Source: Oculina patagonica
Taxonomy: Eukaryota
Direction of reading: 5' to 3'
Length of the DNA: 64,000 nt
Assembly (NCBI RefSeq): GCF_052425735.1
Contig: NC_135759.1
Coordinates: 42,594,001 to 42,658,000, forward strand
A model generated the notes under the pieces. It did not search any database, was not told the origin of the DNA, and saw only the letters and a list, made by a program, of their open reading frames with translations. Shown here in pieces: positions 18,736 to 41,594 of the stretch. The translations under genes were made by a program, and so were the position numbers. Each line of letters starts with the position of its first letter. Within the stretch, counting starts at the first letter, position 1.

Positions 18736-20651
18736 TAGCCTGCGAACAGGCTCCCGAGTGGGGTTCCCGAGTGCCTGAGCAGGGCGTTAGGAGGGAGGGC
18801 GTCGAAACGAGTTCGAGCGGAAAAGCCTTGATGCAGAAGCCTGGGTACCAGTTATAAATTATTGAGGGTTTTCCCTTTCCATGACCAATATGGCGGACGC
18901 CGATTTCGATATAAAATTACATGCCCATAGACGTAAAGGCATCTAAGAAAAAGGAGGGTGAAGATGTGAGGTTTGAACAAACGAGTTGTCGCGGATAGCG
19001 AGCAGCGAATGTAATATTGAGAGTGTAATCATTGCGAGAAATTTTTTTATCCCCTTTGAACTGTCAACAAGCAAAAGTAAAGCCGTTTCTATCTTCCTAT
19101 GAAAAACATGTATTTCACAGGTTTACACAGGTTGCAAATTTTGCAAACCTGTGATCAGGGCGCTTTTAACAAGGTCCTGTGAAAATTTGTAACCTAATAC
19201 TCGATCATGCTAAAGTTCTGGCATGTCAACTTGGAAGTTTGCATTCTGCCCCTTTTTTGTTACGATCGATCACTTCAGGAATTGTTATGCACAATATTTA
19301 ACAATTATTCGCCGAAGGCGAATAATTGTTTTAGTATAATTTTAAGAGGTGATCATCAAGAACTTAAAAAACAAGAGCTCATAGAGCTTACAACTGCGCT
19401 GGTCTCGTGAGCACTTTAGGGGAGCCATGTGGGGGGAACAAAAAATGCACCCCCCCCCCCCCCTTATCCTCTTTACCTGCGTCGAACAATGTTGCGACTG
19501 ACAAACAAGATGGTAGGAAAACACCTTGCGTGACATTTCATGGTTGACTAGTTCCATCCGAAATTAAATATTTTTCTTATATGCTAATGCTGGCCAAATT
19601 TAATTCCCACTATCCTGATCCGTGAAACAAAAAAATCTTTTAAATCAGCATCCAGTGTTGTCTTGAATTACCGTTTAAAGATTGAATAACCAGCTCCGAA
19701 AATGGAATATTGGAGCAAATAATTAAATCAAATTTGAGAAACACACTAGACCTGTGTTTTGCTGGGAATTCCCCGGAGAATTAATTTAGCAATGACGTAA
19801 CCCTTGCAAGTCAGTGCATGTTTGTCAGTGGTTTTCCATCAGATTTCAGAAATCCTATAAATGACACAGCTCCAAAAATAAATAACGCTAAAACGTCGAA
19901 CATTTCACACTTAACATGCTAAGTTTAGACCAGAGGATTTGTTTGTGGCAGATTTAAATCTTTCAGAGCATTGCGTGATTCTTGCCGATCAGTGCCTTGT
20001 GAAAGTAAAAATTTGCTAAGGCCAACACATTCCAGGACACAAACGTAATGTAAATAAATGTAAATTCTTGCCCGCTAAAGCGTATTTTTTTAAAGCGTGA
20101 AATTTTAGTATTTTCTTCGATTCAAACGCTTCAAAATACTTCACACTGAATTTTGTAAGTAAAGATTAATGGCTTCGCAAAGATTTGAAAGGTAGCTGAT
20201 AATAGGATTAGCTTTGAAAAATTACGTGACTCAAGGTCTAGCCGATCGAAAGTGAAACTTGTCATGTCAGCACATTCTTTTACAACAACGTAATGGTATT
20301 TATTCACAGATTCTGGCCCGCTGAAATATAGTTTTCTCTCGACGCATAAAAATTTAGAATTTTCTTTGAATAAAACGCTTCAAAATTGTATATTTCACAC
20401 TAAACATTTTTTGTAAAGACAAAAAATAAGAAAATTTCCCCATTTGTTACTGATTTGTAGCTTCTAAACATCGCGTGACATTAAGCATGACCGAGTGGAG
20501 GTTTGGGACAGGTCACCGACAAAACGAAAAATAACAAGAAGCTCTTAGAGCTTAAAACTGCGCTGGTCACGTGACCACCCTAAGGGAGCCATGGCGGGGG
20601 AATGAAAAAAAGATAACTAAAAAATATTGAACAACTTGAAGTGAAATGGGG

Positions 20652-20682
<31 letters not shown>

Positions 20683-23600
20683 TAAATAAAAAATTCCACA
20701 TCCTGACAGTGGAAAAAAAGCCTTTGCCATAAAAGTTGACCCCCCCCCCCCCTTACCCTAACCCGCCTCAAACAAATTATGGTCGCCCTAAAAAAAACAC
20801 CGATTATTGATTTCATTACGTCTGGCGTCTGGCTTCACGCCAGGAACGTAAGTATCCGTGAGAATTTCGATAGTATTCTCTCTTTGCACAGAATAATCTC
20901 GTTCCCAGATCTCGTGGGCTAAGCCGAAGGCGAGATCTGGTCAAATCCGATTTGCACCACGTGATTGCCTGTCAGGAATGTGGCAGGCGAGTCAATTGCG
21001 CATGCCCTAGACAATTCTAAGAAAATGGCAATCAAATAAATATGCAATCCTCAACCAAATGAATAACGAATGCTTTACCATTCTCGTCTTTCCTGGAATA
21101 ATATCTAGCAGAGTATTTTACTAAAGAATTAAGCAGAAGGCAATCATGAAAGCTTTAGGTCGGGTAAAAATATTTATTTGATTTAAAAAAAATTGTTCAT
21201 TTGGCGGCGAGACATGTCTAGATTTTATGCAAATTAGATCCGGTCACGTAATCAAACATAAATATTCTTACGGCGGATTATCTGTTTTTAAACATCGTTA
21301 TTCGTCAGAAATAGCTTTATAATGCTACAAACAACTAAAACGAAATCTTCTTGTCTTTTGAGGCCGACTGTAAACAACGAAACGTCTCAAAAACGAATAT
21401 ATTATGATTGCGTGCATGATCTATAATTTGCATAAAAAAACAGACATTGAATTCCCTTGGGGCCGCATCGCACGTTCAAATTTTAGCGCTGTGCATGTGA
21501 CAGCCATGCTTTGAAACAGCCAATCAAAAAAATTGAATTTTCTTACTTGGCCAGATCTCGCCTTCCGGCTTGTTGGCCCTCTTTCTGTATTACAATAGGC
21601 GGTTGTTAAAATGTAGCGAGTGACAAACATGATGATAAAAAAGACACCTTGTGTGACATTTCATGGTTGACTAGTTCCAGACGCGATTAATTATTTTTCT
21701 TTTATGCAAATTCTGGCCGAATTCCCACGCGTGGACGCTGAAGCCGTTTTTAGCACAGAGGGTATTCCCCAAGCCTACCAAATGACGTAAGCGGTACAAG
21801 TCAGGGCATGTTTGTGAAGGGAATTTTTCTTCATATCTTTAAAATCCTTTCAATAACATAAAATTGGGAAATACTTTGCAATAAATTTGTTTAGTAAAGA
21901 CCAAAGGATTCGCAAAGATTTGAAAGGTAGCTGATTAATAGCTTTGAAAAATTACGTGACTCGAGGTCTAGCCGATCGAAAGTGAAACTTGTCATGTCAG
22001 CACATTCTTTTCCACCAACGTAATGGTATCTATTCACAGATTCTGGCCCGCTGAATTACATTTCTCTTTGAAAGCGTGGAAATTTAGTATTTTTCATGAG
22101 TCAAAGGCTTCAAATTCGAATATTTCACACTAAGCATACTTTATAAAGACAAAAAAGAGAAAATGTTTCCATTTGTTACTGATTTGTAGTTTCTAAACAT
22201 CGCGTGATTTCAAGCTCGACCGAGTGGAGGTCTGGGTCTGGTCACCGACAAAACGAAAAAAAGCAAGAGCTCTTAGAGCTTACAACTGCGCTGGTCTCGT
22301 GAGCACTTTAGGGGAGCCATCTGGGGGGAACAAAAAATGCACCCCCCCCCCCTTATCCCCTTCACCCGCGACGAACAATGATGCGACTAACAAACAAGAT
22401 GGTAAGAAAGCACATTGCGTGACATTTCATGGTTGACTAGTTCCACCCAAAATTAAATATTTTCCTTATATGCTAGTGGTGGCCAAATTTAATTCCCACG
22501 ATCCTGATCCGTGAAACAAAAAAATCTTTTAAATCAGCATCCAGTGTTGTCTTGAATTACCGTTTAAAGATTGAATAACCAGCTCCGAAAATGGAATATT
22601 GGAGCAAATAATTAAATCAAATTTGAGAAGAACACTAGACCTGTGTTTTGCTGAATGGGAATTCCCCGGGGAATTAATTTACCAATGACGTAATCCTTGC
22701 AAGTCAGGGCATGTTTGTCTCAGTGGTCTTCCTTCAGATTTCAAAAATCCGTAGATGACACAGCTCCAAAAATACGTAAAGCTAAAAAGTCGAACATTTT
22801 ACACTTAACATGCTAGGTTAGTTTCCATTTGTAGCAGTTAAGCTTTCAGAGCACTGCGTGATTCTTGTCGATCGGTGCCTTGTGAAAGTAGAAATTTGCT
22901 AACGCTAGCACATTCCAGGACACAGACGTAATGTAAATAAATGTAAATTCTTGCCCGCTAAAGCATCAAATTTTAGTATTTTCTTTGATTCAAACGCTTC
23001 AAAATACTTCACAGTTTTAAGTAAAGACAAAAGGATTCGCAAAGATTTCAAAGGTGGCTGAATAGCTTTGAAAAATTACGTGACTCCAGCCGATCGAAAG
23101 TGAAACTTGTCATCTCAGCACATTCTTTGACACCAACGTAATGGCATTTATTTACAGATTCTGGCCCACTGAATTATATTTCTCTTTGAAAACTGACCCA
23201 ATGACAATGTTTTGTAGTTTCTATACTGTTAGTATTATTTTTGCCCTTATTTTGGCTTTCGTATTACAATAGGCGGTTGTAAAAATGCAGCGACTGACAA
23301 ACTTTGTGTGACATTTCATGGTTGACTTGTTCCAGCCGCGATTAATAATTTTTCATATATGCAAATTCTGGCCGAATTCCCACGCGCGGACGCTGAAGCT
23401 GTTTTTAGCACAGAGGGTAATTTCCCTGGCATACCGAATGACGTAAGCGGTACAGGGCATGTTTGTGAAGGGAATTTTTCTTCATATCTCTAAAATCCTT
23501 CAACGACACAGCCAAAAAATAGATTACGCAATAAATTTGTTTAGTAAAGACCAAAGGATTCGCAAAGATTTGAAAGGTAGCTTATAATAGCTTTAAAACA

Positions 23601-25241
23601 TTACGTGACTCGAGGTCTAGCCGATCGAAAGTGAAACTTGTCATGTCAGCACTTTCTTTGACACCAACGTAATGGCATTTACTTACAGATTCTGGCCCAC
23701 TGAATTATATTTCTCTTTGAAAGCGTGGAAATTTAGTATTTTCCATGAGTCAAATGCTTTAAAGTCGAACATCTCACACAAAACATTCTTTGTAAAGACA
23801 AAAATAAGAAAAAAAATTCCATTTGTTACTGATTTGTAGCTTCCAAACATCGCGTGATTCGAGCTCGACCGAGTGGAGGTCTGGGTCTGGTCACCGACAA
23901 AACGAAAAAAAACAAGAGCTCTTAGAGCTTACAACTGCGCTGGTCTTGTGAGCACTTTAGGGGGGCCATGTGGGGGGAACAAAAAAATGCACCCCCCTCC
24001 CCTTGTCTCCTTTACCTGCGTCGAACAATGTTGCGACTGACAAACAAGATGGTAAGAAAACACCTTGCGTGACAATTCATGGTTGACTAGTTCCATCCGA
24101 AATTAAACATTTTTCTCATATGCTAATGGTGACCAAATTTAATTCCCACGATCCTGATCCGTGAAACAAAAAAATCTTTTAAATCAGCATCCAGTGTTGT
24201 CTTGAATAACCGTTTAAATATTGAATAACCAGCTCCGAAAATGGAATATTGGAGCAAATAATTAAATCAAATTTGAGAAGAACACTAGACCTGTGTTTTG
24301 CTGAATGGGAATTCCCCGGGGAATTAATTTACCAATGACGTAACCCTTGCAAGTCAGGGCATGTTTGTCTCAGTGGTCTTCCTTCAGATTTCAGAAATCC
24401 TCTAGATGACACAGCTCCAAAAATTTGTAAAGCTAAAAAGTCGAACCTTTTACACTTAACATGCTAGGTTAGTTTCCATTTGTAGCAGTTAAGCTTTCAG
24501 AGCATTGCGTGATTCTTGCCGATCGGTGCCTTGTGAAAGTAGAAATTTGCTAACGCCAGCACATTCCAGGACACAGACGTAATGTAAATAAATGTAAATT
24601 CTTGCCCACTAAGGCGAATTCTTCTTTTAAAGCATCAAATTTTAGTATTTTCTTTGATTCAAACGCTTCAAAATACTTCACACTGAATTTTTTTAATTAA
24701 AGACCAAAGGATTCGCAAAGATTTCAAAAGGAGGCTGAATTGCTTTGAAAAATTACGTGACTCGAGGTCTAGCCGATCGAAAGTGAAACTTGTCATGTCA
24801 GCACATTCTTTTCCACCATCGTAATGGTATTTATTCATAGATTCTGGCCCGCTAAATTATATTTCTCTTTGAAAGCGTGGAAATTTAGTATTTTCCATGA
24901 ACCAAACGCTTCAAAATCGAATAGTTCACACTAAGCATACTTTATAAAGACAAAAAAGAGAAAAATTTTCCATTTGTTACTGATTTGTAGCTTCTAAACA
25001 TCGCGTGATTTCAAGCTCGACCGAGTGGAGGTCTGGGTCTGGTCACCGACAAAACGAAAAAAAATAATAATAATAATAAACCGCGTGCAGAGTAAGAACT
25101 GCGCAGCGCAGTTAATAATAATAACAAGAAGCTCTTAGAGCTTAAAACTGCGCTGGTCACGTGACCACCCTAAGGGAGCCATGGCGGGGGAATGAAAAAA
25201 AGATAACTAAAAAATATTGAACAACTTGAAGTGAAATGGGG

Positions 25242-25275
<34 letters not shown>

Positions 25276-26850
25276 TTCCACATCCTGACAGTGGAAAAAA
25301 AGCCTTTGCCATAAAAGTTGACCCCCCCCCCCTTACCCTAACCCGCCTCAAACAAATTATGGTCGCCCTAAAAAAAACACCCGCTTTCGAAACAAACCCC
25401 GAATATTGATTTCATTACGTCTGGCGTACGGCTTCACGCCAGGAACGTAAGTATCCGTGAGAATTTCGATAGTATTCTCTCTTTGCACAGAATAATCTCG
25501 TTCCCAGATCTCGTGGGCTAAGCCGAAGGCGAGATCTGGTCAAATCCGATTTGCACCACGTGATTGCCTGTCAGGAATGTGGCAGGCGAGTCAATTGCGC
25601 ATGCCCTAGACAATTCTAAGAAAATGGCAATCAAATGAATATGCAATCCTCAACCAAATGAATAACGAATGCTTTACCATTCTCGTCTTTCCTGGAATAA
25701 TATCTAGCAGAGTATTTTACTAAAGAATTAAGCAGAAGGCAATCATGAAAGCTTTAGGTCGGGTAAAAATATTTATTTGATTTAAAAAGAATTGTTCATT
25801 TGGCGGCGAGACATGTCTAGATTTTATGCAAATTAGATCCGGTCACGTAATCAAACATAAATATTCTTACGGCGGATTCTCTGTTTTTAAACATCGTTAT
25901 TCGTCAGAAATAGCTTTATAATGCTACAAACAACTAAAACGAAATCTTCTTGTCTTTTGAGGCCGACTGTAAACAACGAAACGTCTCAAAAACGAATATA
26001 TTATGATTGCGTGCATGATCTATAATTTGCATAAAAAACAGACATTGAATTCCCTTGGGACCGCATCGCACGTTCAAATTTTAGCGCTGTGACAGCCATG
26101 CTTTGAAAGAGCCAATCAAAAAAATTGAATTTTCTTACTTGGCCAGATCTCGCCTTCCGGCTTGTTGCTCTCTTTCTGTATTACAATAGGCGGTTGTTAA
26201 AATGTAGCGAGTGACAAACATGATGATAAAAAAAGACACCTCGTGTGACATTTCATGGTTGACTAGTTCCAGACGCGATTAATTATTTTTCTTTTTTGCA
26301 AATTCTGGCCGAATTCCCACGCGTGGACGCTGAAGCCGTTTTTAGCACAGAGGGTATTCCCCTAGCCTACCAAATGACGTAAGCGGTACAAGTCAGGGCA
26401 TGTTTGTGAAGGGAATTTGTCTTCATATCTTTAAAATCCTTTCAATAACATAAAATAGGGAAATACTTTGCAATATATTTGTTTAGTAAAGACCAAAGGA
26501 TTCGCAAAGATTTGAAAGGTAGCTGATTAATAGCTTTGAAAAATTACGTGACTCGAGGTCTAGCCGATCGAAAGTGAAACTTGTCATGTCAGCACATTCT
26601 TTTCCACCAACGCAATGGTATCTATTCACAGATTCTGGCCCGCTGAATTACATTTCTCTTTGAAAGCGTGGAAATTTAGCATTTTTCATGAGTCAAAGGC
26701 TTCAAATGCGAATATTTCACACTAAACATTCTCTGTAAAGACAAAGAATAACCATTTGTTTCCCTTTGTTACTGATTTATAGCTTCTAAACATCGCGTGA
26801 CATAACCTCGACCGAGTGGAGGTCTGCGTCTGGTCACCGACAAAACTAAA

Positions 26851-26883
<33 letters not shown>

Positions 26884-29239
26884 CCCCGTGCAGAGCAAGA
26901 ACTGCGCAGCGCAGTTAATAAACTGCGTGCAGAGCAAGAACTGCGCAGCGCAGTTAATAATAATAAACCCCGTGCAGAGCAAGAACTGCGCAGCGCAGTT
27001 AATAATAAACCCCGTGCAGAGCAAGAACTGCGCAGCGCAGTTAATAAAACGATAGCAAACAAGAAAACAGCAAACACAAGTGTTCGCTTGCATACATGTA
27101 CAGTGTAAACCAGTTTAATTCATCGATGGCAATCAGAATTTATTTAGTTAAAGCAATAAAACGGAACAAATCAAACACTACGAGAAAGATAGATGTCCGG
27201 TACCTTTGTATGATTGTTGATGACTTCTAAGTGAATGTGCGAATCCTCTCGAAAATGAGTAGCTCCGGTGAGATAAGAACTAAACTAGTGGTAACCACAG
27301 GTTAGAAAGTGCGGGCCTCGATGCAGTTAAGAGAAGGTACTGGGAGGGAAGTGTTTTTTGTTAGTTTGGAAAATTACTTCAAGTCGAAGTTTTTGGGAAG
27401 TTTTCCAGAAGTTGACATAACTGTGGTAATTGAGATTTCTTTTATAAACTGCGGTTGTTTATTGGGAGTCTGTCCACCGAGAATAACAGTATCTCAATGT
27501 GTGCGAAATTATGATGATTTTTTACGTGTTTGATATTACCAATCATATGTTGACAAGTTTGCCATGTTTCAATGGTGAATAAGCCAAAGTTTATCGATAT
27601 TAAATTTTTCAGACAGTGTCGATAAATCACTGGACAAAAAAAAATTATTCCGAGTAAGGTCGAGTAACGCGTCACGCTTAAGTCACGAATGTTTTTTATA
27701 GTTTCCTATTGCCGCGAACCAATCAGAGTTGTTTTTTTGATTGACAGTTTTGCGAAGTGTAGTCGCGCACGCGGTGTGAATTGAGATGTGATTTTCCTCC
27801 GTCGGCAAACTCGCTTTGTTGTCAGTGTTATAAGGAATTTCTCGAGAATAACCGTTGTTGGAATCATTCGCTTTGCCGTAGTTTATCTGTGATACAATCA
27901 CAGCAGATCTTCTCAAAAGCAACACCTATAAAACAACGTCTGCAAAACGTAATGTCTGCAATCTTCCGACAGAAGCCTCATTTTTCGCATTCTTATCGCT
28001 CTTGGAGACAAGATTTTTCTCTTCCGGTGTTACGACAAACTGTCGTGATTGACACATTTTTTGCATTCCGATCGTTCTTAGTGGAAGAACAAAATTTTCA
28101 ACTTCTGGTTTGCAGATAGCCTTTATAAACGTGGCGCGCACGCGTAATACGCAATCCGCTGGTCACTGTCAAGATTAGGGTTGCGGGCCTCTATTGGGCC
28201 CGCAACAATAATGTTTGCTCAGTCGATCTGACTGAGTTTCTCATCGATCGCCCAAACCGCCGTGTTTACGATCGTTTCTTATGCCTTGAGAACCATCTCT
28301 TGAAAATATTTTCGGTCCAAAAGCTTTGGTAGTTAATTTGCAAAATTCCCAATGTTTAAAATATCCAGGACTTGGACTGGTTTCTTTCAAATCAAAGAAA
28401 TTTTCATTCAGCAAAAGCGGCCATGTTAATACTCGCCTGGATGTCAAAGGTGGCATGGCTAAGTAACCAAGCCTCCAAAGCTATAATCACCTCGTGCGGG
28501 GTGAATATAGCCTCATAAGCTGAGCTTTTCGACCAATCAGAATGCTTCAATTCTTATAATCACCTCTGAAATTATACTAATGATACATATTTCTATTTCA
28601 AAATCGCTATATCTTTTTTAAAATCGCGAAATCCCTCGATGTTGTTGAAAAGCATTATGTTAACGTCCATATCATTATGACCATTATGAGATCTTTCGAT
28701 CGCCGTTGTGAAGTTGTTACTTCAGAGAACTTAAAAACGTAAAGGATCACAAAAGATCATTCTACAAATTTGCATACACAATTTAAACGAATAAAGGTGT
28801 CTTTCAATAGGTATTTCAGGCGTTTATTATCATTTTCTTCGGATTGCTCGACGGCCTGTTTTCGACACTACATTTATATTCCAAGAGAAAAAACACAGAC
28901 TCGAAGAAGGTCTTACATAAACTATAGATATTGTCTGTGTATCCCTTAGAATAGTACCAGATATAGAATTTGTTTATGCATTACATCGATTTCGTAATAT
29001 AAAGCAATAAATAAGAACTTGCCTTCAGCTGTCGGCGGCCATTTTCCTTAGCCAAACAGCGAGCCAAGAGCGGAAAAGCGGACTAGTATCAGTCCCTCTC
29101 CGCATCAAGGCTGTAGCAGAGAGCTTGTATGCCCGTTTCACCGCCCTCTGACGCCCTGAGCCTGAGGGCCGCCGCTCCCGTATTCCCCCTCAGGCCCCGC
29201 TCCTCCGCTCGCTTTGCTCGGGAGCCTGCTCGCAGGCCA
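18736..29239. mobile_element. Non-autonomous TIR element (Academ-like TAG terminus) expanded to 10.5 kb by nested insertions
   Basis: Ends TAGCCTGCGAACAGGCTCCC and GGGAGCCTGCTCGCAGGCCA with a longer imperfect subterminal IR. Degenerate 9-bp TSD AGACAAAAA/CGACGAAAA. The flanks rejoin to match copy B intron 1 (~4300-4450). Confidence 0.7.
19370..27045. mobile_element. Head-to-tail array of five Helentron/HINE-like non-autonomous elements (A-B-A-A-B)
   Basis: Units start at AACAAG(A)AGCTC at ~19370, 20533, 22261, 23911 and 25123. The start motif AACTGCGCTG is inverted in the terminal hairpin AACTGCGC-A-GCGCAGTT. Internal degenerate tandem repeats. The end motif is repeated four times at ~26880-27045. 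Confidence 0.7.
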
Positions 29240-29352
29240 CGACGAAAACAATTTACAAACTCTAAAATTATTTTGCAGGAATCGCCAATTCTACTATTAA
29301 AGGAAACAAATTCTGTCATTGTCGAGGAAAGTCCATGCGACAGGCAGGAAAT

Positions 29353-29456
29353 TAGCTTACGTAGCTGGCGGTATTGTTGGGTTTAGTTACGCTGTTGCGG
29401 CTTCGCCGCTTGCTTGTGCGCGCTAAACCCAACAATACTACCAGCTACGTAGGCTA
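29353..29456. mobile_element. TAG...CTA hairpin MITE with 9-bp TSD
   Basis: Near-perfect palindrome; exact TSD GCAGGAAAT at 29344-29352 and 29457-29465. Confidence 0.85.
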
Positions 29457-32400
29457 GCAGGAAATTAAAACAAAATACACAAACACTGAGTACTGTGTGG
29501 TGCACTACACTCAAATGGATAATTTATGTATTTCATGCATAATTTTTGCATTTTTTAACGTGTTAATATATTTGTTTTTTAAATAGCCTTTTTTGTTCTC
29601 ACTCAGTGAATAAAAAAGATTGCGCTGACATCCACAGCTGCGGTCAAACAGTCAGCGGTGTGTACACAATCCACCCAGACGGCCAACAGCCCTTTGATGT
29701 GTATTGTGACCAGACCACTGCCGGTGGGGGCTGGACAGTATTTCAGAAGAGACTGGACGGCTCTGTCAATTTCTACCGCGGCTGGAATGACTACAAAGCG
29801 GGGTTTGGGCACTTGAATGGCGAGTATTGGCTGGGACTTGATAAGCTGCACGGATTAACCACAAACAACAACAAGAGATACAAACTGCGCGTGGATTTAG
29901 AAGATACTACCGGAAACACGGCCTACGCGCAGTACGGTTATTTTGCTGTGTCCAGTGAACAAGCCAAGTATCAGATGAGTCTCGGAACCTATTCCGGTAA
30001 GGCTGCAAAATCATTGTAGTGTTGTTCTTTCTTTCTAGGTACATTTTGGAAACGAGACAGAGTACTACGGCTTCCTTAAATTGCGACCGCATTTTTGTTT
30101 GGTAGAAATTTTAATAATTAGGCGCACATGTAGCTCACATAAATAAATGGCATCCTTATCTCGGCCGTCTGGCAATGACCAGTACTTTCATAGGTAAAGC
30201 TACAAACGTTTTAACTGTGGTTTTCATGGTACCCTTTGGAATATTTATTCGATCCCTCTCTCAGGGAGAGACGACCACGATCGACACCTTGCCCCGTCCT
30301 TTTAAGAGTGTCTTTCAAAACTCCGATAAGTATCGCGCCGGTTTTCTAAAATCGATTTTAATCGATTCTTTCAACAACAGACAGTGAACCCACGCCTTTT
30401 TCCGATTGTAGGAACCGCAGGTGATTCCTTATCCTATCACAAAAGTCATCCATTCTCAACAAAGGACCGCGACAACGACTCATATGGGGAGATCATTGCG
30501 CTGTCAGATTTCACGGTGCGTGGTGGTACGGCTCATGTCACATCTCTAACTTGAACGGTCGTTATCTTCATGGTGCCCATGCCTCCTACGCTGACGGAGT
30601 AAACTGGTAGGCCTGGAAAGGACACCACTACTCTGCTAAACGCGCGGAGATGAAAATTCGTCCCGTTGATTGGATTCCATTGTAAGGATCACGGAGGTAC
30701 TTCTTTTTCAATGCACAGTTGTTTTTTAAACCCAATAAGTTCAAAGAAGTCAACACTAAAGTTGATAGGCGTTATAGGCGAATCATGATAACCTTAATTA
30801 GTGATTGTAACAATTAGAGTGAATTAAGGTTTACAAGTGTAATCTTTAAATCAGTAAAGGGACTTGCTGACTATATATGTGAGTATCGAAGTTGTAACAC
30901 GAGGAAATAAAAGCAAGAAGTAAAGCAGCAGAAGCAGTTTGTGATCAATGTCTTCCTGCATTTGGATGTCTGGTCGTAATATCTTTAAAAAATATAGAAT
31001 GTGATACAATTAAAACTGCAACTTGTGCACAGACCCCCACGGCAAGAAAAAAAGGAAAAAGGGCTGTGGGTATGAGTCCCCCAGTTTAAAGTCCTCTCCA
31101 CTCGTCTCAGTATGGAGATTAGAGCAAAGCTATATGGGCTCTTGACTGAAGGCAATCCAGTTCAAATTTTGTCAGCCGAAGGATAACAATCGTCTTATTA
31201 TGCTCATTAAGATTTTTTATATATACAGCAACGAAATTAACTGAAAGTAAATTTAATGCGTAATTGACTACTTTTTTGATGAGTGTTATTATGGTCAGAA
31301 AAATGTCGGGGAATTTTTGCGCAACCATGGTTTTATTTCAGTTTTTTCAAGGCGTTTTTTTCTTTTCTACTACTTAAGTTTCAGTTTGATATTGTCCAAA
31401 GTTAAAATAGTACTTAGATAGATAATAGTTGTTACACAATTTATAAACTCAATTCGAACTTGACTGCTTGGGTCCAAGTACCTCATTTGGCAATGAGAAG
31501 AATTTATTGATCTATCTCCATTCTGCCCAAGCTCTTTCACCTTTGGCTCTGATTACTTCATAACAGCATTTTAACAGTTGGGCTGACAAAAAGGAAAGAG
31601 AACAGCGGGAATCAAATTTCTGTAAAATTTAGTACACGAGAGCAACGTGACACACAATTTTATAACATAAAATTTATTGAGAAAAGCACACATTCTCGTT
31701 TTCTCGTTCCCAGAGGCCGCAATTTTTCTGGTCAGCGCTAAGAATCGGGAACTCTGAGCGATTACATTAATTTTCGTAAGCATGACCCACTGACCGTTTT
31801 TTAGGTAATCGCACAACCTGATTGGCTACACAGGTGCCGTCTATTGATCGACTGGGGACGGCCCTTGAAGCGCGCGCTATTTTTCGCTGAATTTTATCAA
31901 TCAAAACCTTTAATAATCGATTTTAGTGATATTCTGTGTTGAATAGATCGGTCAATGGGTTTTGCTAAAACAATTAGACGGCTCGCTCTCAGTTTCTAAC
32001 GACTGACTGTGATCTAGATACCTCGAGCTCGCCGTCTATTTATTAAATAGATTGCACCTGTGTAGCCATTCAGATTGCGCAATTACCCAATGGACGGCCA
32101 GTGGGTTATGGTAACAACCGATAGTTCCTCGACAAAAATTATTCTCTTGCGTGGACCATTAGATTTCGAGTTTGCCTAATGATCGATCACTGGGTTATTC
32201 TTATGACAGATAGGCTCTTTAGTCATCTCTCTCTATTGACATCTCTTTAGTTACCTCTATAAGACGGACACCTGGTGATGGTCCCTGCGTTTTTTTTTTC
32301 TGTATACATTTTACTGTAACTATACTCCCTACAAAACGGACACCTCTCCTAGAAGGACAACGGGCACTTAGCCTGCGTAGCAGGTGCCTGTAGTTATTAA

Positions 32401-33926: not shown

Positions 33927-34191
33927 CTTATTCCCACGGAGGGTGGCGGCCATTTGCCAAAATGTATTAGCTCAGGTTATTACCTGAACTAACAAGTGCC
34001 AGAAACCAGAAAGTTATTATAAACATGCTATTGATGTGTCCGACATTACAGCGAATCATACGTTTCGGTTTAGCGCGTTGTAGCGCAAACTGTCAATCCT
34101 GAGCGCAGGCTGTGTAGATATAAGAATACCCCCTGAATTGCGTTCAAAATTCCATTCAAGGAGAAGTTGAACTGAACTGCTAGCACTCACA

Positions 34192-35426
34192 ATGACTGGG
34201 AAATTTTTTAAGGGAATTTTACTTCTTTTGTTTTTTCTCTGTCTCGTTTGTGGAACTTCCTTATCACAGCAGACGACCAGCGATGAATGTGACTGTTGTA
34301 AACTTCTGAAAACAGTGATAAACAAACAGAAAGATGTGGACAGGAAAATTGACGAAATTTCCCAACAGAATAGAAACCTGGATAAAAAGATCGATTTGCT
34401 TCTTGAATCGAACGCTAAATGCTCAGAAGGTAGGAAGGTCATCTTGAGTATTAATGAAAGTTAGATAGTTAAGGGGCTTTGTCACGAATTTTACCAGATT
34501 TTTGAACATCAAAAAGTTATATTTGTGTCGCAGGAAACCTAACATAAATAGTTCGCCTTAATTAAAAACTGCTATATTAGAGCATTGAACCTGTAAACGA
34601 GCGCCGTCTTTGGCTGCGGATGGCTCGGATGAGAATAGATTGCAACTTGAAAAATTAAGGCTTAACGTTTCGAGTAGCCTGCGAACGCAGACGTATTTTC
34701 GGCTTTCGTTTCTCTCCAAATACGTCTGCGTTTGTAGGTTAGACAAAAAGGTAAATTGTGTTTTAATTGGCAGGCGTGTTCTTCAAAAATTAGCTGCGCC
34801 TCTTTACGTATTCGCTCATAGAAAACTGTCAAACTCGGGCTTGTACGGCTAAATACAAACTCCGTAAGTCATTCGATTTCGTGCAGTGACCTAGAGGAAA
34901 ATCATTAACCCTAGCACTGTTTTCATGTTTTTAAACTTTAGACTTCATTTTGATTTAATTTCGCCTTTTTGATATTTCATTTGCCGGATCTTCTTGTCCA
35001 GAAGGTTGGTTTCTCCATGAAAAGTCATGTTTCCTGATCATCAACATCCCAACCATGAAATGGAGCGATGCTAGGAGAACTTGCCAGAATCTAGGAGGAG
35101 ACCTCGCCATAATCAGATCAGCTGCTGAAAACAACTTTATCTTTAATTTATTAAAGAAGCAGAAGACAGTCCAACGTTGGGGTGTGTGGCTTGGTTTTAT
35201 CCGCAAGGCTGATAATAAGTTCTACTGGATCGACGACACTCCCCTGGCGGGTCAGTATTCACAGTGGGGAAGTGGGAACCCAAACAATGCCCACCCCGGC
35301 GAAAACTGTGGAAACATTTTTGGCATCGGAATCGGCGAGGGAAAGTGGAACGACTTGTGGTGCGATTTGAAAGAGTCCCAGCTGAAGTTGGCCCCAAGTG
35401 TTCTTTGCCAGAAAAAGTCCAAATGA
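34192..35426 (+). CDS. Secreted C-type lectin (FReD-type exon 1 plus single CTLD exon)
   Basis: Exon 1 (34192-34429) is paralogous to FReD exon 1. Exon 2 starts at 34987 (CG acceptor) or 35002 (in-frame CAG) and runs to 35426: CPEGW, SCF, WSDARRTC, GGDLAII, VWLG, WIDDTP, ENC, KWNDLWC, LCQK. Confidence 0.8.
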
Positions 35427-37910
35427 GGCTGCTGTCTTTTTGTTTTTAAGTAGAACTAGAAATTGAACTTGGTGGGGTATAAAGAATTTCAGTTACAAAG
35501 CAAATCGGTTGTTATTTCGATGAGGTCATTCCGGCTTGATTCGCGATCTCTTGTCATGCATTTTTTGGTTGAGTTGCGCTATGTAAGGCAAAAATTAAAA
35601 TAAAAGTGGTGCATATTTGCAACTTGTCAACATTGTGATATTTATTTTTTTTATTTAATTCAAACACGTGACCTGAATTTCCAACAAATTTCTTACGGGT
35701 TTGGTAGATCTCGTATGTGAAAGGGAAGGATTTTGTTGACGCGGTTCTTTTGTCCCAATACAAAGGAGAAAGATTTAAAAATCAACACTAAAGATCATTT
35801 GGGACGTCGTGAAAAAAGATCAACTATTCTATTGGTTAGTGCAGCGTTTAAAGCGTTGGTCAGTGAGAAGGTCGATTGTCCACCTTCAGGGGCCTTTTAT
35901 ATTATCTTGTTGCTATGTGCCTGTACATCGACAGCTGACAGTACTCCAAACTGAGTCTCAGGAAACTGGACTTAAGTTTTTATGGAGAATTAAAAAAATT
36001 GGGCAGTACATTAAAGAGAACAATAGAGATCACGCGATTAGAACTTAGAACACAACGGGGTGAAAGTTAGGGTTATGTTAAACCCATAGTAGTGTCTGGG
36101 TTGGGGTTGCAGGGTAATGGTTTATGGGTTAGGGTTGTTGTGGTTAGGGTTACAATAGATTTACGGTAGGGCTGCATTTTGGACCTGGGGTAGTCACCTG
36201 ACTAGCACTCCAGTCACGCTGGATCACCTTAGATAAAGTACTTTTAGCCTTGTAACTGTATTTGAGCCTAAATAATGTTTCTGGTCAAGCAACAATTTTA
36301 AATTATTTACTCCTCTTGAATTCAATTTTGTACTGTGGTCTGATGATAAAGGTTTGAGGGCTAGTGCCGTCCACCCTCCACCATAATATAACTTCTTGCC
36401 CTGTGCTCAAGTTAAAACAAACATTTGCAGAGGGACTAGTATTGATGGGCCTTGCAAGTTTGAAGAATCTCAGAATTCGAAAGAAAATCGACAAACGAAA
36501 AGTGTTTTTGGTTAATGACTCTGTACGTGCGTTTTGGATTTAGGCCTATTCTGGGACCCAAAGTCGCCGTATTTTTGGGGCTGCGTTTTAGGGTTTTTTT
36601 TTTTTTTTCCAAATTTGGGGGGTTTTTGGGGGTTTTTGGGGGTTTTGGGGGCTTTTGGGGGTTTGGGGGTTTTTTGTGTTTTTTTGGTTTTTTTGTTTTT
36701 TTGGATTTTTGGCCCCTTTTTTTGTTTTGTTGTATATTTATGGTTCCTACACAAAAAATTTTTTAAAAAAAAATATTATATCATATAAAAAAAATTAGGT
36801 TGGTTTTTGGTTTTTGGCTTTTGGGGGCCCGGGGGCGATCTTTGATTTATATTTATTTAGCTGTCCTCTGAAATATAGCAGGAATTAACAAATTCTGGTG
36901 TTATTTTGTTTTGGGTTTCGTGTATATTTGTACGAGGTTCTTTGTCGTCTTGGTCGTTCTTTGTACGAGTAAATTTCACAGCATCTTTCACTGAGGATGA
37001 AAAAAGAAATCGTTCACTGGGGATGAGCCAAATTCTGCGTATTTTTTGGAGAACGTGAATTGACTTAAACTACGTTTATATATTTAGCTGGGGCTAGTAT
37101 TAAACCGATGATAAATAATATTTTTAATTCGACTTTGTCTTTAGTGTGATTGCTAACCGTTCTTCAAATTCCAAAAGGGCCTATACACTCGCGCCGGGCG
37201 CGCCGGCCATTGAACGCTTTCATTGCGACCTATAGCTAGCCCTTGTGAGACGAAATCAAGATTTCCTCGGCTGTGTAGCTGATGTGTTTTGTAAACAGTC
37301 GGGAGAACAACCGTCTTCTTTGAAACATAAGCGTGCTTTATGCAAATTTACAAAGAAAGAAAAAAGAAGTTTATCCAAAAGTGTGGTCAATGGAGCACTT
37401 TTTTCATTGCTACTTTCTAAGTTTTTATCGCGAGATAAAACGCATGCTTACATTTCTTAAAAATCTTAAATTTCTCTTTACATTGAGGTGAAGGAAGTAA
37501 ATTTCTAAGTTTATGTTTAACATTCTGGTTTAGGTCACATGACATTGGGTGCGTTTTGATGACGCCACAAACTGCCCCAAATTCTGTCCACATTTTGTCA
37601 AATATAAGAAGAATTATGTTAAGTTACAGTACGTAATATTTTCAGTAAAATTCTCTAGACACGGCTTCATAAAACACTGTAAAATGCCTAAAACGCAACC
37701 CGAAAAAGGCTTGCCTTCTTGCTTTCAGTTGTTCCATTCTATTATTCCATTTTATTGCTGATCAGATCTCTCAGTAGATCCCACGAATAGCAGCATTATC
37801 GTTTGCGGTCCCTTGCAGTTTTAGCCTTACTTTTGCCTTTTTTTCAGAAGTAAATATAGGACTATTGTGTTGCTACATAACCATAATGACCCTACGTATG
37901 CTATGTCTTG

Positions 37911-37970
37911 TGATTGTAAGAACTGCGGGTGATCCCTTATCGTATCACAAAAATCGTTCATTCACAACAG
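37911..37970 (+). pseudogene. Short relic of FReD exon 3 start
   Basis: TGATTGTAAGAACTGCGGGTGATCCCTTATCGTATCACAAAAATCGTTCATTCACAACAG aligns with 14128-14188; the acceptor AG is mutated to AA. Confidence 0.65.
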
Positions 37971-38195
37971 TAGAAAGACTAGTATTAAATGCATCCCTTG
38001 CTATATCTTTCACTTGAGTAACCTCTTTAAATACTTAGACAAATCAGCCATAAGATGCGTCTGTTCGGCCCTTTGAAATATCTAAATGACAATTTCCTAC
38101 AACTTTCTGTTCCTCGGCTCGTGAAATCCCCGCCCGTTTATATACTGACGGCCTGAAAAAGGTACCCATTTTGGGCGGGGTCTCCCCGTATATAA

Positions 38196-38823: not shown

Positions 38824-41594
38824 ATGGCAGACCAGATTTTTAAGTGCATTTTAGTTATTTTGTTTTGTGCCTCGCTATGTGAAGTGCTCGTTTGTGGAGC
38901 TGCCTTATCGCAGCAGACGACGGACAATGGCTGTGCTATTTGTAAACTTCTGAAAACACTGGTCAACAAGCAAAACCAAATTTCACGGCAGAACAAAAAT
39001 CTCGAGAAAAAGATCGATTTGCTTCTTGGATCAAAAGCCAACTGCTTAGAAGGTAGGAAGTATTGTCGAAGTTAGATAATTAAACAGAAATCCGTTTTCT
39101 TTGTATCAACTGGAGTTTCATAGATTGACTCCACAGTACATTATGGAAAACATTCCTTACGATATTTCGGGCCTTATCTATGGAACAAACTAGATCACAG
39201 TGACAGAGAGAAACCAAATATCACGAGCTTTAAAAACAGTATTACACGTCACACGTCTTATACAAACTGAGTGTAAAAGTGACATATGCAGCTAGGCCGA
39301 TTTAAATTTTTAAATGTTTAATTTTTAATTCTTAACTGCAATTTTTATCTTTCACCTACTTTTATTATAAAATTTTATATTTTATTCTCATTTATTTATT
39401 TATTCATTTATTTATCTATTCACCTATGTAGTACGGTTCTTTTTTTCTTAGAATTTAAGTGTAAATATTTTTAACTTTATGTAGCTTAGCCATCCCAAAA
39501 ATGCCGCCCACGCCCGACCGACCCACGAAAAGAAAAAAAAAAAAAAAAAAAAAGCGACCTACGCACCGACGCCTGTATGATGTTGTGTCCAACCGAACCA
39601 GCTGAGGACAAAGACCACGAGTGACGCAGGCCACCAAGCAGCCCGCCCCGGAATCCAGAACCCCAGTGTCACGCCCGACCGACCGACCCACCGTCACAAG
39701 AGACCGGGCGAGGGAAACGAAACATTTATTGGGATGGCCTAGTAGATTTTAATGTAAATAGTGTCCCCAATTAGTTTTTTAAAGCTAAATACCTTGACAC
39801 TATAATAAAGTATTTCATCCATTCACAAAGAAAAAACCTAAACACCATGACACTTTCCCTGCCCTGCACGTAATGAACCAACCGCAAAATCGTTTATTTC
39901 CGGCTGCCGGCGGGAGTCAAGGTTACCATCAGCTTTTCAAAAACACTGGTAAGTTGAAATGAAAAGGAAAAAAATAACTATTTACGGCCGAAATGTGTCT
40001 TAGCAATGCGAAACCTTATTGAAGACCACTGGTTGGATCAGTTCAACGAAGCGCAAGGAAACAATTTGGTTTGATGATATTCTAAAATTATTGTAAAAAA
40101 AAAAACGAATTCTAAACAAAAAACAAAACTTCACAAACAAAACAATAACGAAAACAAAACAACTTGTAAAAATGTGGTCATACGATTGTCGGTTTATCAC
40201 TTGCACTATGCCCACTACATTCAACCTTTTGAAACAGAAAAGGTTTTGGCAATCTGCCTTTCACACACACACACAGCTAGGCAATGAACAAGCAAGTTGG
40301 CTCGGTTGAAACATTCCCATTGTACGCGTGTTATACATTTCAATTAATTTGTATTTTTAAGCCCAAATCACGCTTGTTTTGCTTTTCACTCAGTGAATCA
40401 AACAGACTGCACTGACGTCTATAGCTGCGGTCAAACAGTCAGCGGTGTGTACACAATCCACCCAGACGGCCAACAGCCCTTTGATGTGTATTGTGACCAG
40501 ACCACTGCCGGTGGGGGCTGGACAGTATTTCAGAAGAGACTGGACGGCTCTGTGGATTTTTACCGCGGCTGGGCCGACTACAAAGCGGGGTTTGGGCACT
40601 TGAATGGCGAGTATTGGCTGGGACTTGATAAGCTGCACGGATTAACCACAAACAACAACAAGAGATACAAACTGCGCGTGGATTTGGAGGACACTACCGG
40701 AAACACGGCCTACGCTGAGTACGGTTATTTTGCTGTGTCCAGTGAACAGTCCAAGTATCAGTTGAGCCTTGGAACCTATTCCGGTAAGGCTGCAGCATCT
40801 TTTTTTGTTCTTTTTGGTAACGAGGCGAAGTATGCTTCCTTAATTTACAACCACAGTTCTTGTTTGGTAGAAATGATTGGGTGCAATGTTTTCAGAGTCA
40901 CGCACAGGAGCAAGTTGGGCCCTCGTCCGAACTCTATAAATCGTGATACATGAAAGGTTGGCAGAAAAGCCTGGCTATCTGGCTTTCTGGCTGTCTTTTA
41001 ATGACGAGTATCTTCTAGGTCTAGGCAGGAGCCCATCGGTCTAGGACTTTATATGTTTGCAGCTGTGTTTATCATGGTACGTCTTTTAAAATTTGAAGCA
41101 AACCTATCCTAAAAGATGTCCCTCTTAAGAAGGTGATACATTAAGTCACGACCACATCACCTTGCACCTTTCCTTTTAGAGACTCCCGTCAAAATCTTAA
41201 AAGTCCACCTACGGGCAGCATACAGTTGCTCACTATCTGTGGTGCCATTCATAGTTATTGCCTTTTATATATTCTGTCAAGAGAAGTCATATAATCCAGG
41301 TCTTTTTTATTGTTTGTAGGAACTGCAGGTGATTCCTTATCCGGTGTAAAAAGTGAAGCATTCTCAACAAAAGACCGTGACAATGACGCATATGGCAGAG
41401 GTAGCTGCGCTGTCATGTATCACGGTGCGTGGTGGTACGGCTCATGTCACAGCTCTAACTTGAACGGTCGTTATCTTCATGGTGCCCATTCCTCCTACGC
41501 TGACGGAGTAAACTGGCGCACTTGGAAGGGATACCGTTACTCTGCTAAACGCGCGGAGATGAAAATTCGTCCCGTTGGTTGGATTCCATCGTAA
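38824..41594 (+). CDS. Secreted FReD lectin copy E, ~297 aa, intact
   Basis: Exons 38824-39052, 40394-40783, 41320-41594 splice to an 894-nt open frame with FBG motifs. Confidence 0.92.
39115..39260 (+). mobile_element. LINE (L2/CR1-like) 3' fragment
   Basis: [18 protein letters not shown] motif typical of LINE ORF2 C-termini, followed by an AT-rich tail. Confidence 0.6.
39488..39740. mobile_element. MITE with GCCATCCCAA TIR
   Basis: AGCCATCCCAAAAATG...CATTTATTGGGATGGCCT; internal CCGA repeats. Confidence 0.65.

What the first reader, a model, noticed from the sequence alone, without database searches (positions are those of the whole stretch)
34192..35426. Interchangeable recognition heads: the same secretion/oligomerisation exon is joined to either a fibrinogen domain or a C-type lectin domain
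Seen: the CTL gene's exon 1 (signal peptide, CxxC, coiled coil, IDLLL..NAKC, phase-1 donor GTAGGAA) and its promoter are clear paralogs of the FReD exon 1, but the next exon is a CTLD in the same phase. Established: vertebrate ficolins and collectins, and molluscan FREPs and CREPs, pair one stalk with FBG or CTLD heads. Inference: an independent, collagen-free version formed by exon shuffling within one cluster. All junctions are phase 1 and co-oriented, so cross-gene splicing and FReD/CTL hetero-oligomers are possible. I do not know of a description of this system.
Basis: partly seen in the sequence, partly recalled or inferred. Interest (0 to 1): 0.82.

Follow-up and report, generated by a model that had tools for sequence, protein, structure and literature searches.

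The report
Chimeric coral lectin from exon shuffling
In the stony coral Oculina patagonica, one gene in a row of fibrinogen-type lectin genes kept the family's first exon (secretion signal plus trimer-forming stalk) but swapped its fibrinogen head for a C-type lectin exon copied from another chromosome; this is a clean, traceable case of exon shuffling, not a new kind of system.

Summary
The window is Oculina patagonica. It holds a same-strand tandem cluster of three-exon fibrinogen-related (FReD) genes, and every junction is phase 1.

The gene at 34192-35426 joins a paralogous first exon (E1) and promoter to a single C-type lectin (CTLD) exon. My hand model equals NCBI XP_078356757.1.

The origin can be traced:
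- A 0.8-kb block (34955-35746) is 85% identical to a C-type lectin gene on another chromosome. It includes intron and 3' flank, so it is a DNA-level copy.
- That family's own leader exon is absent here and shows no detectable homology to E1.
- In another coral's syntenic locus, the orthologous E1 precedes fibrinogen exons.
- The window keeps a fibrinogen-exon relic at 37907-37978.
- The old acceptor is mutated (CAG to CAT). A tandem acceptor 21 nt downstream is used, and E1's last cysteine takes the place of the lectin domain's first cysteine.

The CTLD has dN/dS of about 0.2. RNA-like runs cover both exons, but I never saw the splice joint itself.

A three-copy model puts the whole interface in E1: score 0.60, best control 0.31.

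Cross-gene splicing and mixed oligomers have no support, and heptad-step differences in stalk length argue against mixing.

The scan flagged similar exon mixing elsewhere in this genome; I did not check those notes.

The parts
33936..34191 (+). Promoter and 5' region of the chimeric gene. It is orthologous to the region upstream of a FReD gene in another coral and paralogous to the FReD promoters of the cluster. A TATA-like TATAAG lies at 34119-34124.
   Evidence: blastn: 33936-34465 matches the syntenic locus at 78%. 34115-34437 matches gene D and 33946-34352 matches gene C at about 68%.
34192..34429 (+). Exon 1 (E1), residues 1-79 plus one base. It encodes a hydrophobic signal peptide (about residues 1-24), a Cys cluster (C33, C35, C36 at 34288-34299), a heptad-repeat coil (residues 38-77) and a terminal Cys77 (34420-34422). 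Phase-1 donor G|GTAGGAAG.
   Evidence: The interface of the three-copy model lies at residues 33-74. RNA-like contigs cover 34175-34427.
34430..35001 (+). Phase-1 intron, a mosaic of five pieces. 34430-34472 is FReD-type intron start. 34471-34771 is a high-copy repeat insertion. 34772-34954 is unique sequence of unknown origin. 34955-34980 is the 3' end of the CTL family's own intron, with the old acceptor CAG now CAT at 34978-34980. 34981-35001 is the first 21 nt of the ancestral CTLD exon, which still reads ..SSCPE in frame.
   Evidence: Depth spike and loose ends at 34471.
35002..35426 (+). Exon 2: a long-form C-type lectin domain plus stop codon. It has a tandem acceptor: AG at 35000-35001 gives isoform X1 and AG at 35003-35004 gives isoform X2. 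The sugar-site motif reads NPN (35277-35285) instead of the family's EPN. WND is kept (35346-35354).
   Evidence: Pfam Lectin_C E 1.1e-17. Isoforms of 220 and 219 aa. Cys map. Alignment to solved CTLDs. dN/dS 0.22-0.25.
34955..35746 (+). Block copied at the DNA level from the two-exon CTL family on another chromosome. It carries about 26 nt of that family's intron, the whole CTLD exon and about 320 nt of 3' flank. A conserved AATAAA lies at 35599-35604.
   Evidence: 85% identity over 797 nt to G000:C13 at 15.85 Mb (L004), 80% to L005 and 80% to L002. 3' flank alignment.
37907..37978 (+). Relic of the start of a second fibrinogen exon (FBGb), lying between the CTLD exon and gene D. It is most likely the remains of this gene's former head.
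   Evidence: tblastn E 1.6e-7 to the FBGb exon of gene B. 85% nucleotide identity over 62 nt to 14125-14186.
38824..41594 (+). FReD gene D, intact, 297 aa: E1 38824-39052, FBGa 40394-40783, FBGb 41320-41594.
10152..14411 (+). FReD gene B, intact, 283 aa, with the shortest stalk: E1 10152-10338, FBGa 11574-11963, FBGb 14137-14411.
3769..6131 (+). FReD gene A, apparently a pseudogene. It has a TAG in E1 and a frame problem at the start of FBGa.
18232..30700 (+). FReD gene C, apparently a pseudogene. Its first intron is 11 kb and full of repeats, and FBGb has a frameshift after ..DSYGE.

Best explanation
This is a lineage-specific chimeric gene made by DNA-level exon shuffling.

Origin. A tandem FReD cluster held a three-exon gene, E1 | FBGa | FBGb. 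A copy of about 0.8 kb from the last part of a two-exon C-type lectin gene landed in that gene's first intron. The copy carried the tail of the donor intron, the CTLD exon and the 3' flank with its poly(A) signal. The donor family sits on another chromosome.

Why it worked. Both parental introns are phase 1, so E1 could be spliced to the CTLD exon in frame, and the transcript ends at the lectin gene's own poly(A) site. The fibrinogen exons downstream became redundant and decayed; only a 72-nt relic is left.

Later change at the junction. The old acceptor was lost (CAG to CAT). A tandem acceptor 21 nt further on is now used. This removes the CTLD's own first cysteine, and the last cysteine of E1 sits in its place. 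In isoform X2 the spacing equals the canonical C-x-E-G-W.

Product (inferred). A secreted protein whose E1 part supplies the signal peptide, an N-terminal cysteine cluster for inter-chain bonds and a parallel in-register coiled coil, most likely a trimer. It therefore carries three CTLD heads instead of fibrinogen heads and acts as a multivalent soluble recognition lectin. Its sugar site is altered (NPN for EPN), so the ligand may differ from that of its relatives.
For: Gene model and expression:
- The model equals NCBI isoform X1. Isoform X2 differs by one Glu, exactly at the tandem acceptor.
- In RNA-like runs X1, X2 and X6 both exons are covered, while the promoter (33952-34115) has zero depth. 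The unique part of the intron has zero depth in X1.
- One contig fits 35000-35123 with 34 letters hanging upstream. Another fits 34185-34427 with 52 letters hanging downstream.

Donor:
- 34955-35746 is 85% identical to C13 at 15.85 Mb, including intron and 3' flank.
- That family's leader exon (..QTFNINNWGLGKIERKLL..) sits upstream of every relative (L004, L005, three times in L002) but is absent from the window.
- The leader shows no detectable homology to E1 (hhalign probability 3%).
- The old acceptor is CAG in all five relatives and CAT here. The old intron is phase 1 (junction ..SLSEK|VTGSAC in P0145).

Recipient:
- In another coral (ENA ERZ25067872), the region between FReD genes and the same anthrone-oxygenase-like genes holds the orthologous E1 (78% nucleotide identity including the promoter, same DECDCC motif and extra heptad). 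It is followed by FBGa and FBGb, with no CTLD.
- The window holds an FBGb relic at 37907-37978.
- In nine E1 loci from five other coral assemblies the next coding exon found downstream is fibrinogen.

Timing: 3' flank identity between the window copy and C13a (0.80) exceeds that between C13a and its counterpart in the other coral (0.71). A shared indel unites the Oculina copies.

Selection: dN/dS is 0.22-0.25. The ORF is intact, whereas both nearest C13 paralogs carry stop codons.

Cysteine: HMMER aligns E1's KC-SEEGW to the RC-DAGW and SC-PEGW starts of solved long-form CTLDs.

Oligomer: in the three-copy model, score 0.60 against a best control of 0.31. That mark was reached by 21 of 30 proteins solved as pairs of one chain and by 0 of 23 solved as single chains. 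The runs share at least 81% of contacts and the partner's pLDDT is at least 79. All confident contacts lie at residues 33-74, in register, at heptad a/d positions. Indels among E1 paralogs are 7, 14 and 21 residues.
Against: - The exon 1 to exon 2 joint was not listed among the joints that read laying printed (104 rows hidden). It is therefore inferred from hanging contig ends, the depth pattern and NCBI's models, not read directly.
- One contig of a related species runs unspliced across the acceptor, 34947-35423.
- No public protein or JGI metagenome contig spans the junction.
- In the coding region the window CTLD is further from C13a (dS 0.36) than C13a is from the other coral's copy (dS 0.24). 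This would fit an older copy or faster change, and it conflicts mildly with the flank-based dating.
- The other coral's orthologous E1 appears disabled (a 1-nt indel and a TGA before the donor). It shows the ancestral arrangement, not a working ancestral gene.
- The complex job used three copies, unlike its calibration, and coiled coils may score from memory.
- The sugar site has NPN instead of EPN, so lectin activity is not assured.
Confidence: 0.8

Rival explanations
1. E1 is a shared cassette in a working combinatorial system. Read-through or cross-gene splicing joins any E1 to either head, and FReD and CTL chains co-assemble into mixed oligomers.
For: All genes are on the same strand and all junctions are phase 1. 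E1 stalks are 50-64% identical. The stalk is predicted to self-associate. One submitter model fuses the upstream FReD gene to the CTL gene.
Against: - There is only one chimera among 7-8 E1 copies.
- The CTLD exon brings its own conserved poly(A) signal.
- The fused model uses a frameshifted FBGb exon and an acceptor inside E1, and NCBI does not reproduce it.
- The distance from the Cys cluster to the terminal Cys is 41 residues in the CTL gene, 34 in D, 27 in A and C, and 20 in B. An in-register parallel coil cannot align both ends in mixed chains (the second step is inference).
- No co-expression data exist.
Confidence: 0.07
2. The two exons are merely neighbours. The CTLD copy is a dead insertion, and the 220-aa protein is an annotation artefact.
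For: The joint was not seen directly. No transcript-derived protein spans it. Several cluster members and both nearest CTL paralogs are pseudogenes.
Against: - The ORF is intact and dN/dS is 0.22-0.25.
- Both exons are covered in RNA-like runs that lack the promoter and the unique intron part.
- Contig ends stop at both exon borders. The exon-2 contig starts at 35000, as expected from the shared AG.
- NCBI gives two isoforms that differ only at the tandem acceptor.
- No other signal-peptide exon of the CTL family lies in the window.
Confidence: 0.07
3. The event ran in the opposite direction. A CTL gene was resident here, and a copy of promoter plus E1 was inserted in front of it, replacing its leader exon.
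For: Promoter plus E1 can move as a unit: an orphan copy (81% identity, with about 150 nt of FReD intron) lies on another chromosome.
Against: - The promoter and E1 are in syntenic position relative to the other coral, between FReD genes and the anthrone-oxygenase-like genes.
- The CTL-family homology is a bounded block of about 0.8 kb inside FReD-cluster DNA.
- An FBGb relic lies downstream.
- The CTL family's home clusters are on other chromosomes.
Confidence: 0.04

Closest known systems
Vertebrate collectins and ficolins
   Same: One kind of N-terminal cysteine-rich oligomerising stalk carries either a C-type lectin head or a fibrinogen-like head. The products are multivalent soluble recognition molecules. 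(Established knowledge.)
   Different: Their stalk is collagen-like (G-X-Y) and the two families are old and separate. Here the stalk is a short coiled coil with no G-X-Y. The two head types share a demonstrably paralogous exon, and the swap is recent and confined to one gene.
Gastropod FREPs, CREPs and GREPs
   Same: A common N-terminal module is joined to fibrinogen, C-type lectin or galectin heads in a lineage-restricted immune family (PMC8878817 for their restriction to Heterobranchia; the IgSF architecture is from my own knowledge).
   Different: Their common module is immunoglobulin-superfamily domains, not a coiled coil. There is no IgSF here.
Invertebrate 'signal peptide + coiled coil + FReD / CTL / C1q' lectins
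   Same: The same simple architecture, with the coil thought to replace collagen for oligomerisation (PMC8878817, sections 2.1-2.3).
   Different: Those reports describe similar architectures family by family. Here one and the same exon lineage is shown on two head types, with the donor, the recipient and the breakpoints identified.
Neck-plus-CTLD trimers (tetranectin, CD23, langerin, DC-SIGN neck)
   Same: An alpha-helical coiled-coil neck directly precedes a long-form CTLD. Solved CTLDs of CD23, langerin and DC-SIGN match residues about 76-205. A parallel three-chain coil is predicted here.
   Different: The neck here is not homologous to theirs. It comes from a fibrinogen-lectin gene, and its last cysteine doubles as the CTLD's first cysteine.
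The coral two-exon CTL family (leader ..QTFNINNWGxG..RKLL..KIDSL.. plus CTLD; NCBI names such as 'perlucin-like' and 'macrophage mannose receptor 1-like')
   Same: The CTLD exon is 60-85% identical in protein and shares the phase-1 intron and the 3' flank.
   Different: The leader exon is replaced by an unrelated one. The acceptor moved 21 nt. EPN became NPN.

Membership tests
C-type lectin-like domain (Pfam PF00059), long form | Significant match to the domain profile | tested here: met
   Lectin_C E 1.1e-17, 65 bits against a cut-off of 22.6. Matches to solved CTLDs down to E 3e-35.
C-type lectin-like domain (Pfam PF00059), long form | Six cysteines: C0-C0', C1-C4, C2-C3 | tested here: met
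   Cys at 77, 89, 107, 182, 200 and 215. C77 is encoded by E1 and aligns with the first Cys of solved long-form CTLDs. The pairing itself is inferred.
Ca2+-dependent sugar-binding CTLD (mannose type) | EPN (or QPD) plus WND motifs | tested here: not met
   NPN at residues 172-174 where relatives have EPN. WND is present at 195-197. Sugar binding therefore cannot be assumed.
Fibrinogen-related proteins of this cluster (FReD subfamily) | Fibrinogen_C domain | tested here: not met
   The CTL gene has no fibrinogen exon. Only a 24-residue relic remains 2.5 kb downstream. It shares the family's promoter and E1 only.
Fibrinogen-related proteins of this cluster (FReD subfamily) | E1 stalk exon: signal peptide, C-x-x-C, heptad coil, ..A(N/K)C.. 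end, donor G|GTAGGAA, phase 1 | tested here: met
Collectins | Collagen-like G-X-Y repeats before the neck and CTLD | tested here: not met
   No G-X-Y run in the 220-aa protein. Pfam finds only Lectin_C.
Gastropod CREP/FREP | N-terminal IgSF domains | tested here: not met
   No Ig-type Pfam hit in any exon scanned.
Young chimeric gene made by DNA-level exon shuffling | Identifiable donor and recipient parents, breakpoints in introns, compatible phases | tested here: met
   Donor at C13 15.85 Mb. Recipient ortholog with FBG exons in another coral. The copied block carries intron sequence. Both introns are phase 1.
Young chimeric gene made by DNA-level exon shuffling | The chimeric transcript exists | tested here: inconclusive
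   Both exons are present in RNA-like runs with contig ends at the exon borders, and there are two NCBI isoforms. The joint itself was not displayed.
Coiled-coil oligomeric lectin | Self-association through the stalk | tested here: met
   Prediction only. Score 0.60 against a best control of 0.31. The mark was reached by 21 of 30 solved one-chain pairs and by 0 of 23 solved single chains. At least 81% of contacts are shared between runs, and pLDDT is at least 79. The interface is residues 33-74. Indels come in heptad multiples.

The most novel reading that the evidence does not exclude
E1 is a portable 'secrete, trimerise and staple the head' cassette that this coral uses more than once. Low-level read-through or cross-gene splicing, or co-assembly of chains, would then place fibrinogen and C-type lectin heads on one particle. 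Recurrent FBG/CTLD exon mixing elsewhere in this genome (unchecked scan notes s1-317012 and s1-317057) would make it a general way of diversifying recognition molecules.
Probability: 0.07. Interest if true: 0.8.

Novelty: new variant of a known kind. Interest (0 to 1): 0.5.

Why it matters
Soluble defence lectins are thought to have been built by joining oligomerising stalks to sugar-binding heads, but for collectins and ficolins the joining events are too old to see.

Here every step is still visible in one coral genome:
- the donor gene;
- the recipient gene in its ancestral state in a relative;
- the intron breakpoints and the matching phases;
- the decayed old head;
- the lost acceptor and its tandem replacement;
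- a cysteine of the stalk exon taking over a structural disulfide of the new head.

This makes it a good worked example of how a new recognition molecule arises. It also gives a natural experiment on whether a coiled-coil stalk is head-independent. For coral biology, it adds one expressed, selected, lineage-specific lectin with an altered sugar site in a species studied for bleaching and Vibrio infection.

It does not reveal a new mechanism.

Tried and rejected
1. Direct view of the splice joint. Read laying (one call allowed) listed only the 15 best-supported joints, all in repeats. The 34429-to-35002 joint was neither shown nor excluded.
2. Exact scan of JGI metagenome contigs for the spliced junction, allowing both isoforms: 0 matches.
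3. Protein search with E1 alone inside the full-length protein: only the protein itself and one read-through ORF.
4. Profile search of 1.84 billion representatives with six E1 sequences: 19 hits. Seventeen are E1-like short ORFs, mostly read-through single exons of corals, and two are cytochrome or coiled-coil false positives. None is a full-length protein.
5. Protein search with residues 30-135 to catch partial transcripts across the junction: no hit covers both sides.
6. Homology between E1 and the CTL family's own leader exon (both contain KID.L): rejected, hhalign probability 3%.
7. Retrocopy origin of the CTLD exon: rejected, because the copied block contains intron sequence.
8. KAL9985634.1 (374 aa, fibrinogen half plus part of E1 plus CTLD) as evidence for cross-gene splicing: rejected as a likely prediction artefact over a frameshifted exon.
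9. Search for fibrinogen exons within 10 kb of other CTLD exons of this family, among the top genome-wide hits: none apart from this locus. This covers only the best-scoring 27 and 150 places.
10. FBGa relic between 35800 and 37900: none found.

The hetero-oligomer prediction was not run. The single complex job went to the homotrimer.

Full report
**What is there**

The window is a piece of chromosome-scale contig C2 (42.594-42.658 Mb) of the stony coral Oculina patagonica.

Positions 3.7-41.6 kb hold a same-strand tandem cluster of fibrinogen-related (FReD) genes with a fixed three-exon plan:
- E1 encodes a signal peptide, a C-x-x-C motif, a heptad coil and an ..A(N/K)C.. end.
- FBGa is a symmetric phase 1-1 exon of 390 nt.
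- FBGb is the last exon.

The splice sites are nearly identical in all copies: G|GTAGGAA, cactcag|TG, G|GTAAGG and ttgtag|GA. Genes B and D are intact, at 283 and 297 aa. Gene A has a TAG in E1 and a frame problem in FBGa. Gene C has a frameshifted FBGb and an 11-kb repeat-filled first intron. Two more members lie just upstream of the window.

Genome-wide, this FBGa exon type has at least 150 copies. The E1 type studied here has only 7-8 copies. All of them are in this cluster except one orphan.

The gene at 34192-35426 has two exons. Exon 1 (34192-34429) is a clear paralog of the FReD E1:
- tblastn E values run from 5e-20 to 1e-4 within the 64-kb window.
- Protein identity is 50-64%.
- The donor is the same.
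- DNA similarity extends 75-250 nt upstream of the ATG.

Exon 2 (35002-35426) is a C-type lectin domain (Pfam E 1.1e-17). The spliced ORF is identical to NCBI XP_078356757.1, 'perlucin-like protein isoform X1'. Isoform X2 lacks one Glu, exactly as expected if the second AG of the tandem acceptor ccAG|AAG| is used.

**Where the two halves come from**

The CTLD half:
- Its relatives in other corals, and its nearest relatives in Oculina itself, are two-exon genes.
- Their first exon is a quite different leader (signal peptide..QTFNINNWGxG..RKLL..KIDSL..).
- A profile-profile comparison finds no detectable homology between that leader and E1 (probability 3%).
- The leader is absent from the window.
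- Window 34955-35746 is 85% identical over 797 nt to the nearest Oculina paralog on contig C13. The match begins in that gene's intron and runs about 320 nt past the stop codon, through a conserved AATAAA.
- The CTLD exon therefore arrived as genomic DNA, not as a retrocopy.
- The donor intron is also phase 1 (G|TC.., giving ..SLSEK|VTGSACP..).

The E1 half:
- A 0.5-Mb contig of another coral (ENA ERZ25067872) is syntenic. It has FReD genes followed by the same anthrone-oxygenase-like genes.
- There, the ortholog of the CTL gene's promoter and E1 is followed by ordinary FBGa and FBGb exons and then by the ortholog of gene D. No CTLD is present.
- The orthology rests on 78% nucleotide identity over 549 nt, the same DECDCC motif and the same extra heptad.
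- In the window, orthology stops 36 nt into the intron and resumes about 250 nt upstream of gene D's E1.
- Between those points lie a high-copy repeat, 183 nt of unique DNA, the CTL block, and a 72-nt relic of an FBGb exon at 37907-37978 (E 1.6e-7).
- In nine E1 loci from five other coral assemblies, the next coding exon found downstream is fibrinogen. At two further E1 loci (L001, L014) the contig ends before the next exon.

**The junction was remodelled**

All five relatives have the acceptor tttCAG|TCACCGGATC.GCTTGTCCAG. The window has CAT at 34978-34980. The next AG, 21 nt downstream, is used instead. The former exon start still reads ..SSCPE in frame but is now intron.

This removes the CTLD's own first cysteine. 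E1 ends in ..NAKCSE, so the protein reads KCSEEGW (X1) or KCSEGW (X2) where relatives read ACPEGW. HMMER aligns this E1 cysteine with the first cysteine of solved long-form CTLDs.

The six CTLD cysteines are thus complete (77, 89, 107, 182, 200, 215). C33, C35 and C36 are left over for inter-chain bonds (the pairing is inferred).

**Is it alive?**

- In three RNA-like runs the promoter has zero depth and both exons are covered. The unique part of the intron has zero depth in X1. A DNA run covers everything.
- A 158-nt contig fits 35000-35123 with one mismatch and 34 letters hanging upstream. The start at 35000 is what a transcript ending ..GAAG|AAGG would give.
- A 350-nt contig of a related species fits 34185-34427 with 52 letters hanging downstream.
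- The joint itself was not among the rows printed. I treat splicing as very likely, about 0.9, but not as seen.
- dN/dS of the CTLD against its nearest paralog and against the other coral's copy is 0.22-0.25.
- Both nearest Oculina paralogs carry stop codons, and NCBI annotates one as a truncated 157-aa protein.

**Timing**

In the 3' flank, the window copy is closer to C13a (0.80) than C13a is to the other coral's copy (0.71), and the Oculina copies share an indel. This points to a copy made after the two corals split.

Coding-region dS points the other way (0.36 against 0.24). The date is therefore soft.

Related species in the read sets carry E1 at about 97% and the CTLD at about 95% identity, so the chimera is probably shared within the genus.

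**How it probably works**

E1 residues 39-77 form 5.5 regular heptads. Paralogs differ by indels of exactly 7, 14 or 21 residues.

I folded three copies of the mature protein:
- The score was 0.60 against a best control of 0.31.
- That mark was reached by 21 of 30 proteins solved as pairs of one chain and by 0 of 23 solved as single chains.
- The runs share at least 81% of contacts, and the partner's pLDDT is at least 79.
- The job had three copies, unlike the calibration.
- All confident contacts lie in E1 (residues 33-74), parallel and in register, at a/d positions.

I therefore read the product as a secreted, disulfide-linked, probably trimeric lectin with three CTLD heads. The sugar-site motif is NPN where relatives have EPN, with WND kept. 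Its ligand may have changed, or Ca2+-dependent sugar binding may be weakened.

**What is not supported**

The 'system' aspect of the reading is not supported. This is a single event.

Cross-gene splicing has no evidence. The only item is a submitter gene model that threads a frameshifted FBGb exon into an acceptor inside E1.

Mixed FReD/CTL oligomers were not tested. The distance from the Cys cluster to the terminal Cys is 41 residues in the CTL protein, 34 in D, 27 in A and C, and 20 in B. An in-register parallel coil could not align both ends in mixed chains. That is an inference.

**Comparison with what is known**

Functionally this parallels the collectin/ficolin and FREP/CREP pairs, and the simple 'coiled coil plus head' lectins of molluscs (PMC8878817). 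It is not a member of those families, because it has neither collagen nor IgSF domains.

A survey of cnidarian C-type lectins lists many domain partners but not this arrangement (PMC8260672). My paper searches found no description of it.

Oculina proteins show that the same CTLD exon family also sits behind EGF and PAN modules. Two unchecked notes of this scan report exon mixing of CTLD and fibrinogen-like parts elsewhere in the genome. The CTLD exon is thus a frequent traveller.

**Verdict**

The combinatorial extras are unsupported. It is a new variant of a known kind and a well-documented example, not a new mechanism.

Noticed in passing
window 16137-16472: A second fragment of the CTL gene's 3' end (last 17 nt of the CDS plus 3' flank) lies between FReD genes B and C. 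It is closer to the window's own CTL gene (84%) than to the C13 paralogs (79% and 75%). It is probably the remnant of a duplicated chimera or of a duplicated cluster unit.
   Followed up: partly
G000:C1:29320983-29321600 (L008 about 1835-2585, minus strand): An orphan copy of the promoter, E1 and about 150 nt of FReD intron 1 lies on another chromosome. It is 81% identical to the CTL gene's E1, with a frameshift and stop in the signal peptide. No fibrinogen or CTLD exon lies within 10 kb downstream.
   Followed up: partly
G000:C13:15850992-15851411 and 15866992-15867411 (L004, L005): The two nearest CTL paralogs keep the ancestral leader exon, but each has a premature stop in the CTLD. NCBI annotates one as a 157-aa truncated protein (LOC144634874).
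   Followed up: partly
window 45118-49135: Four intronless anthrone-oxygenase-like (Pfam Anthrone_oxy / DUF1772) genes. The same genes follow the FReD cluster in two other coral assemblies (L013, L016), so the linkage is conserved.
   Followed up: partly
window 19300-27200: Large block of repeated ORF-bearing units on both strands inside the 11-kb first intron of FReD gene C. It looks like segmental or tandem repeats or nested mobile elements.
   Followed up: no
window 36060-36180 and 36614-36711: Degenerate telomere-like (TTAGGG-like) and T/G-rich short tandem repeats lie in the stretch that replaced the fibrinogen exons.
   Followed up: no
window 34471-34771: A very high-copy repeat with an internal inverted repeat (about 34680-34735) is inserted in the chimeric gene's intron. 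Contigs of all four runs pile up here and break at 34471.
   Followed up: no
window 34150-34175: An RNA-like contig fits from 34175 onward, with 25 letters hanging upstream. The window has a GAACT tandem duplication here that the ortholog and the orphan copy lack. An allelic indel or a 5' UTR splice could explain it.
   Followed up: no
L012 9018-9258 (other coral, ENA ERZ25067872): The orthologous E1 in the other coral has a 1-nt length difference in an A run and a TGA just before the donor. That FReD gene may be a pseudogene there, or the assembly may have an error.
   Followed up: partly
window 29567-34270 (protein KAL9985634.1): The submitter's gene model fuses FBGa and part of the frameshifted FBGb of gene C to an acceptor inside the CTL gene's E1 (before ..QTTSDE). 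This is probably a prediction artefact.
   Followed up: partly
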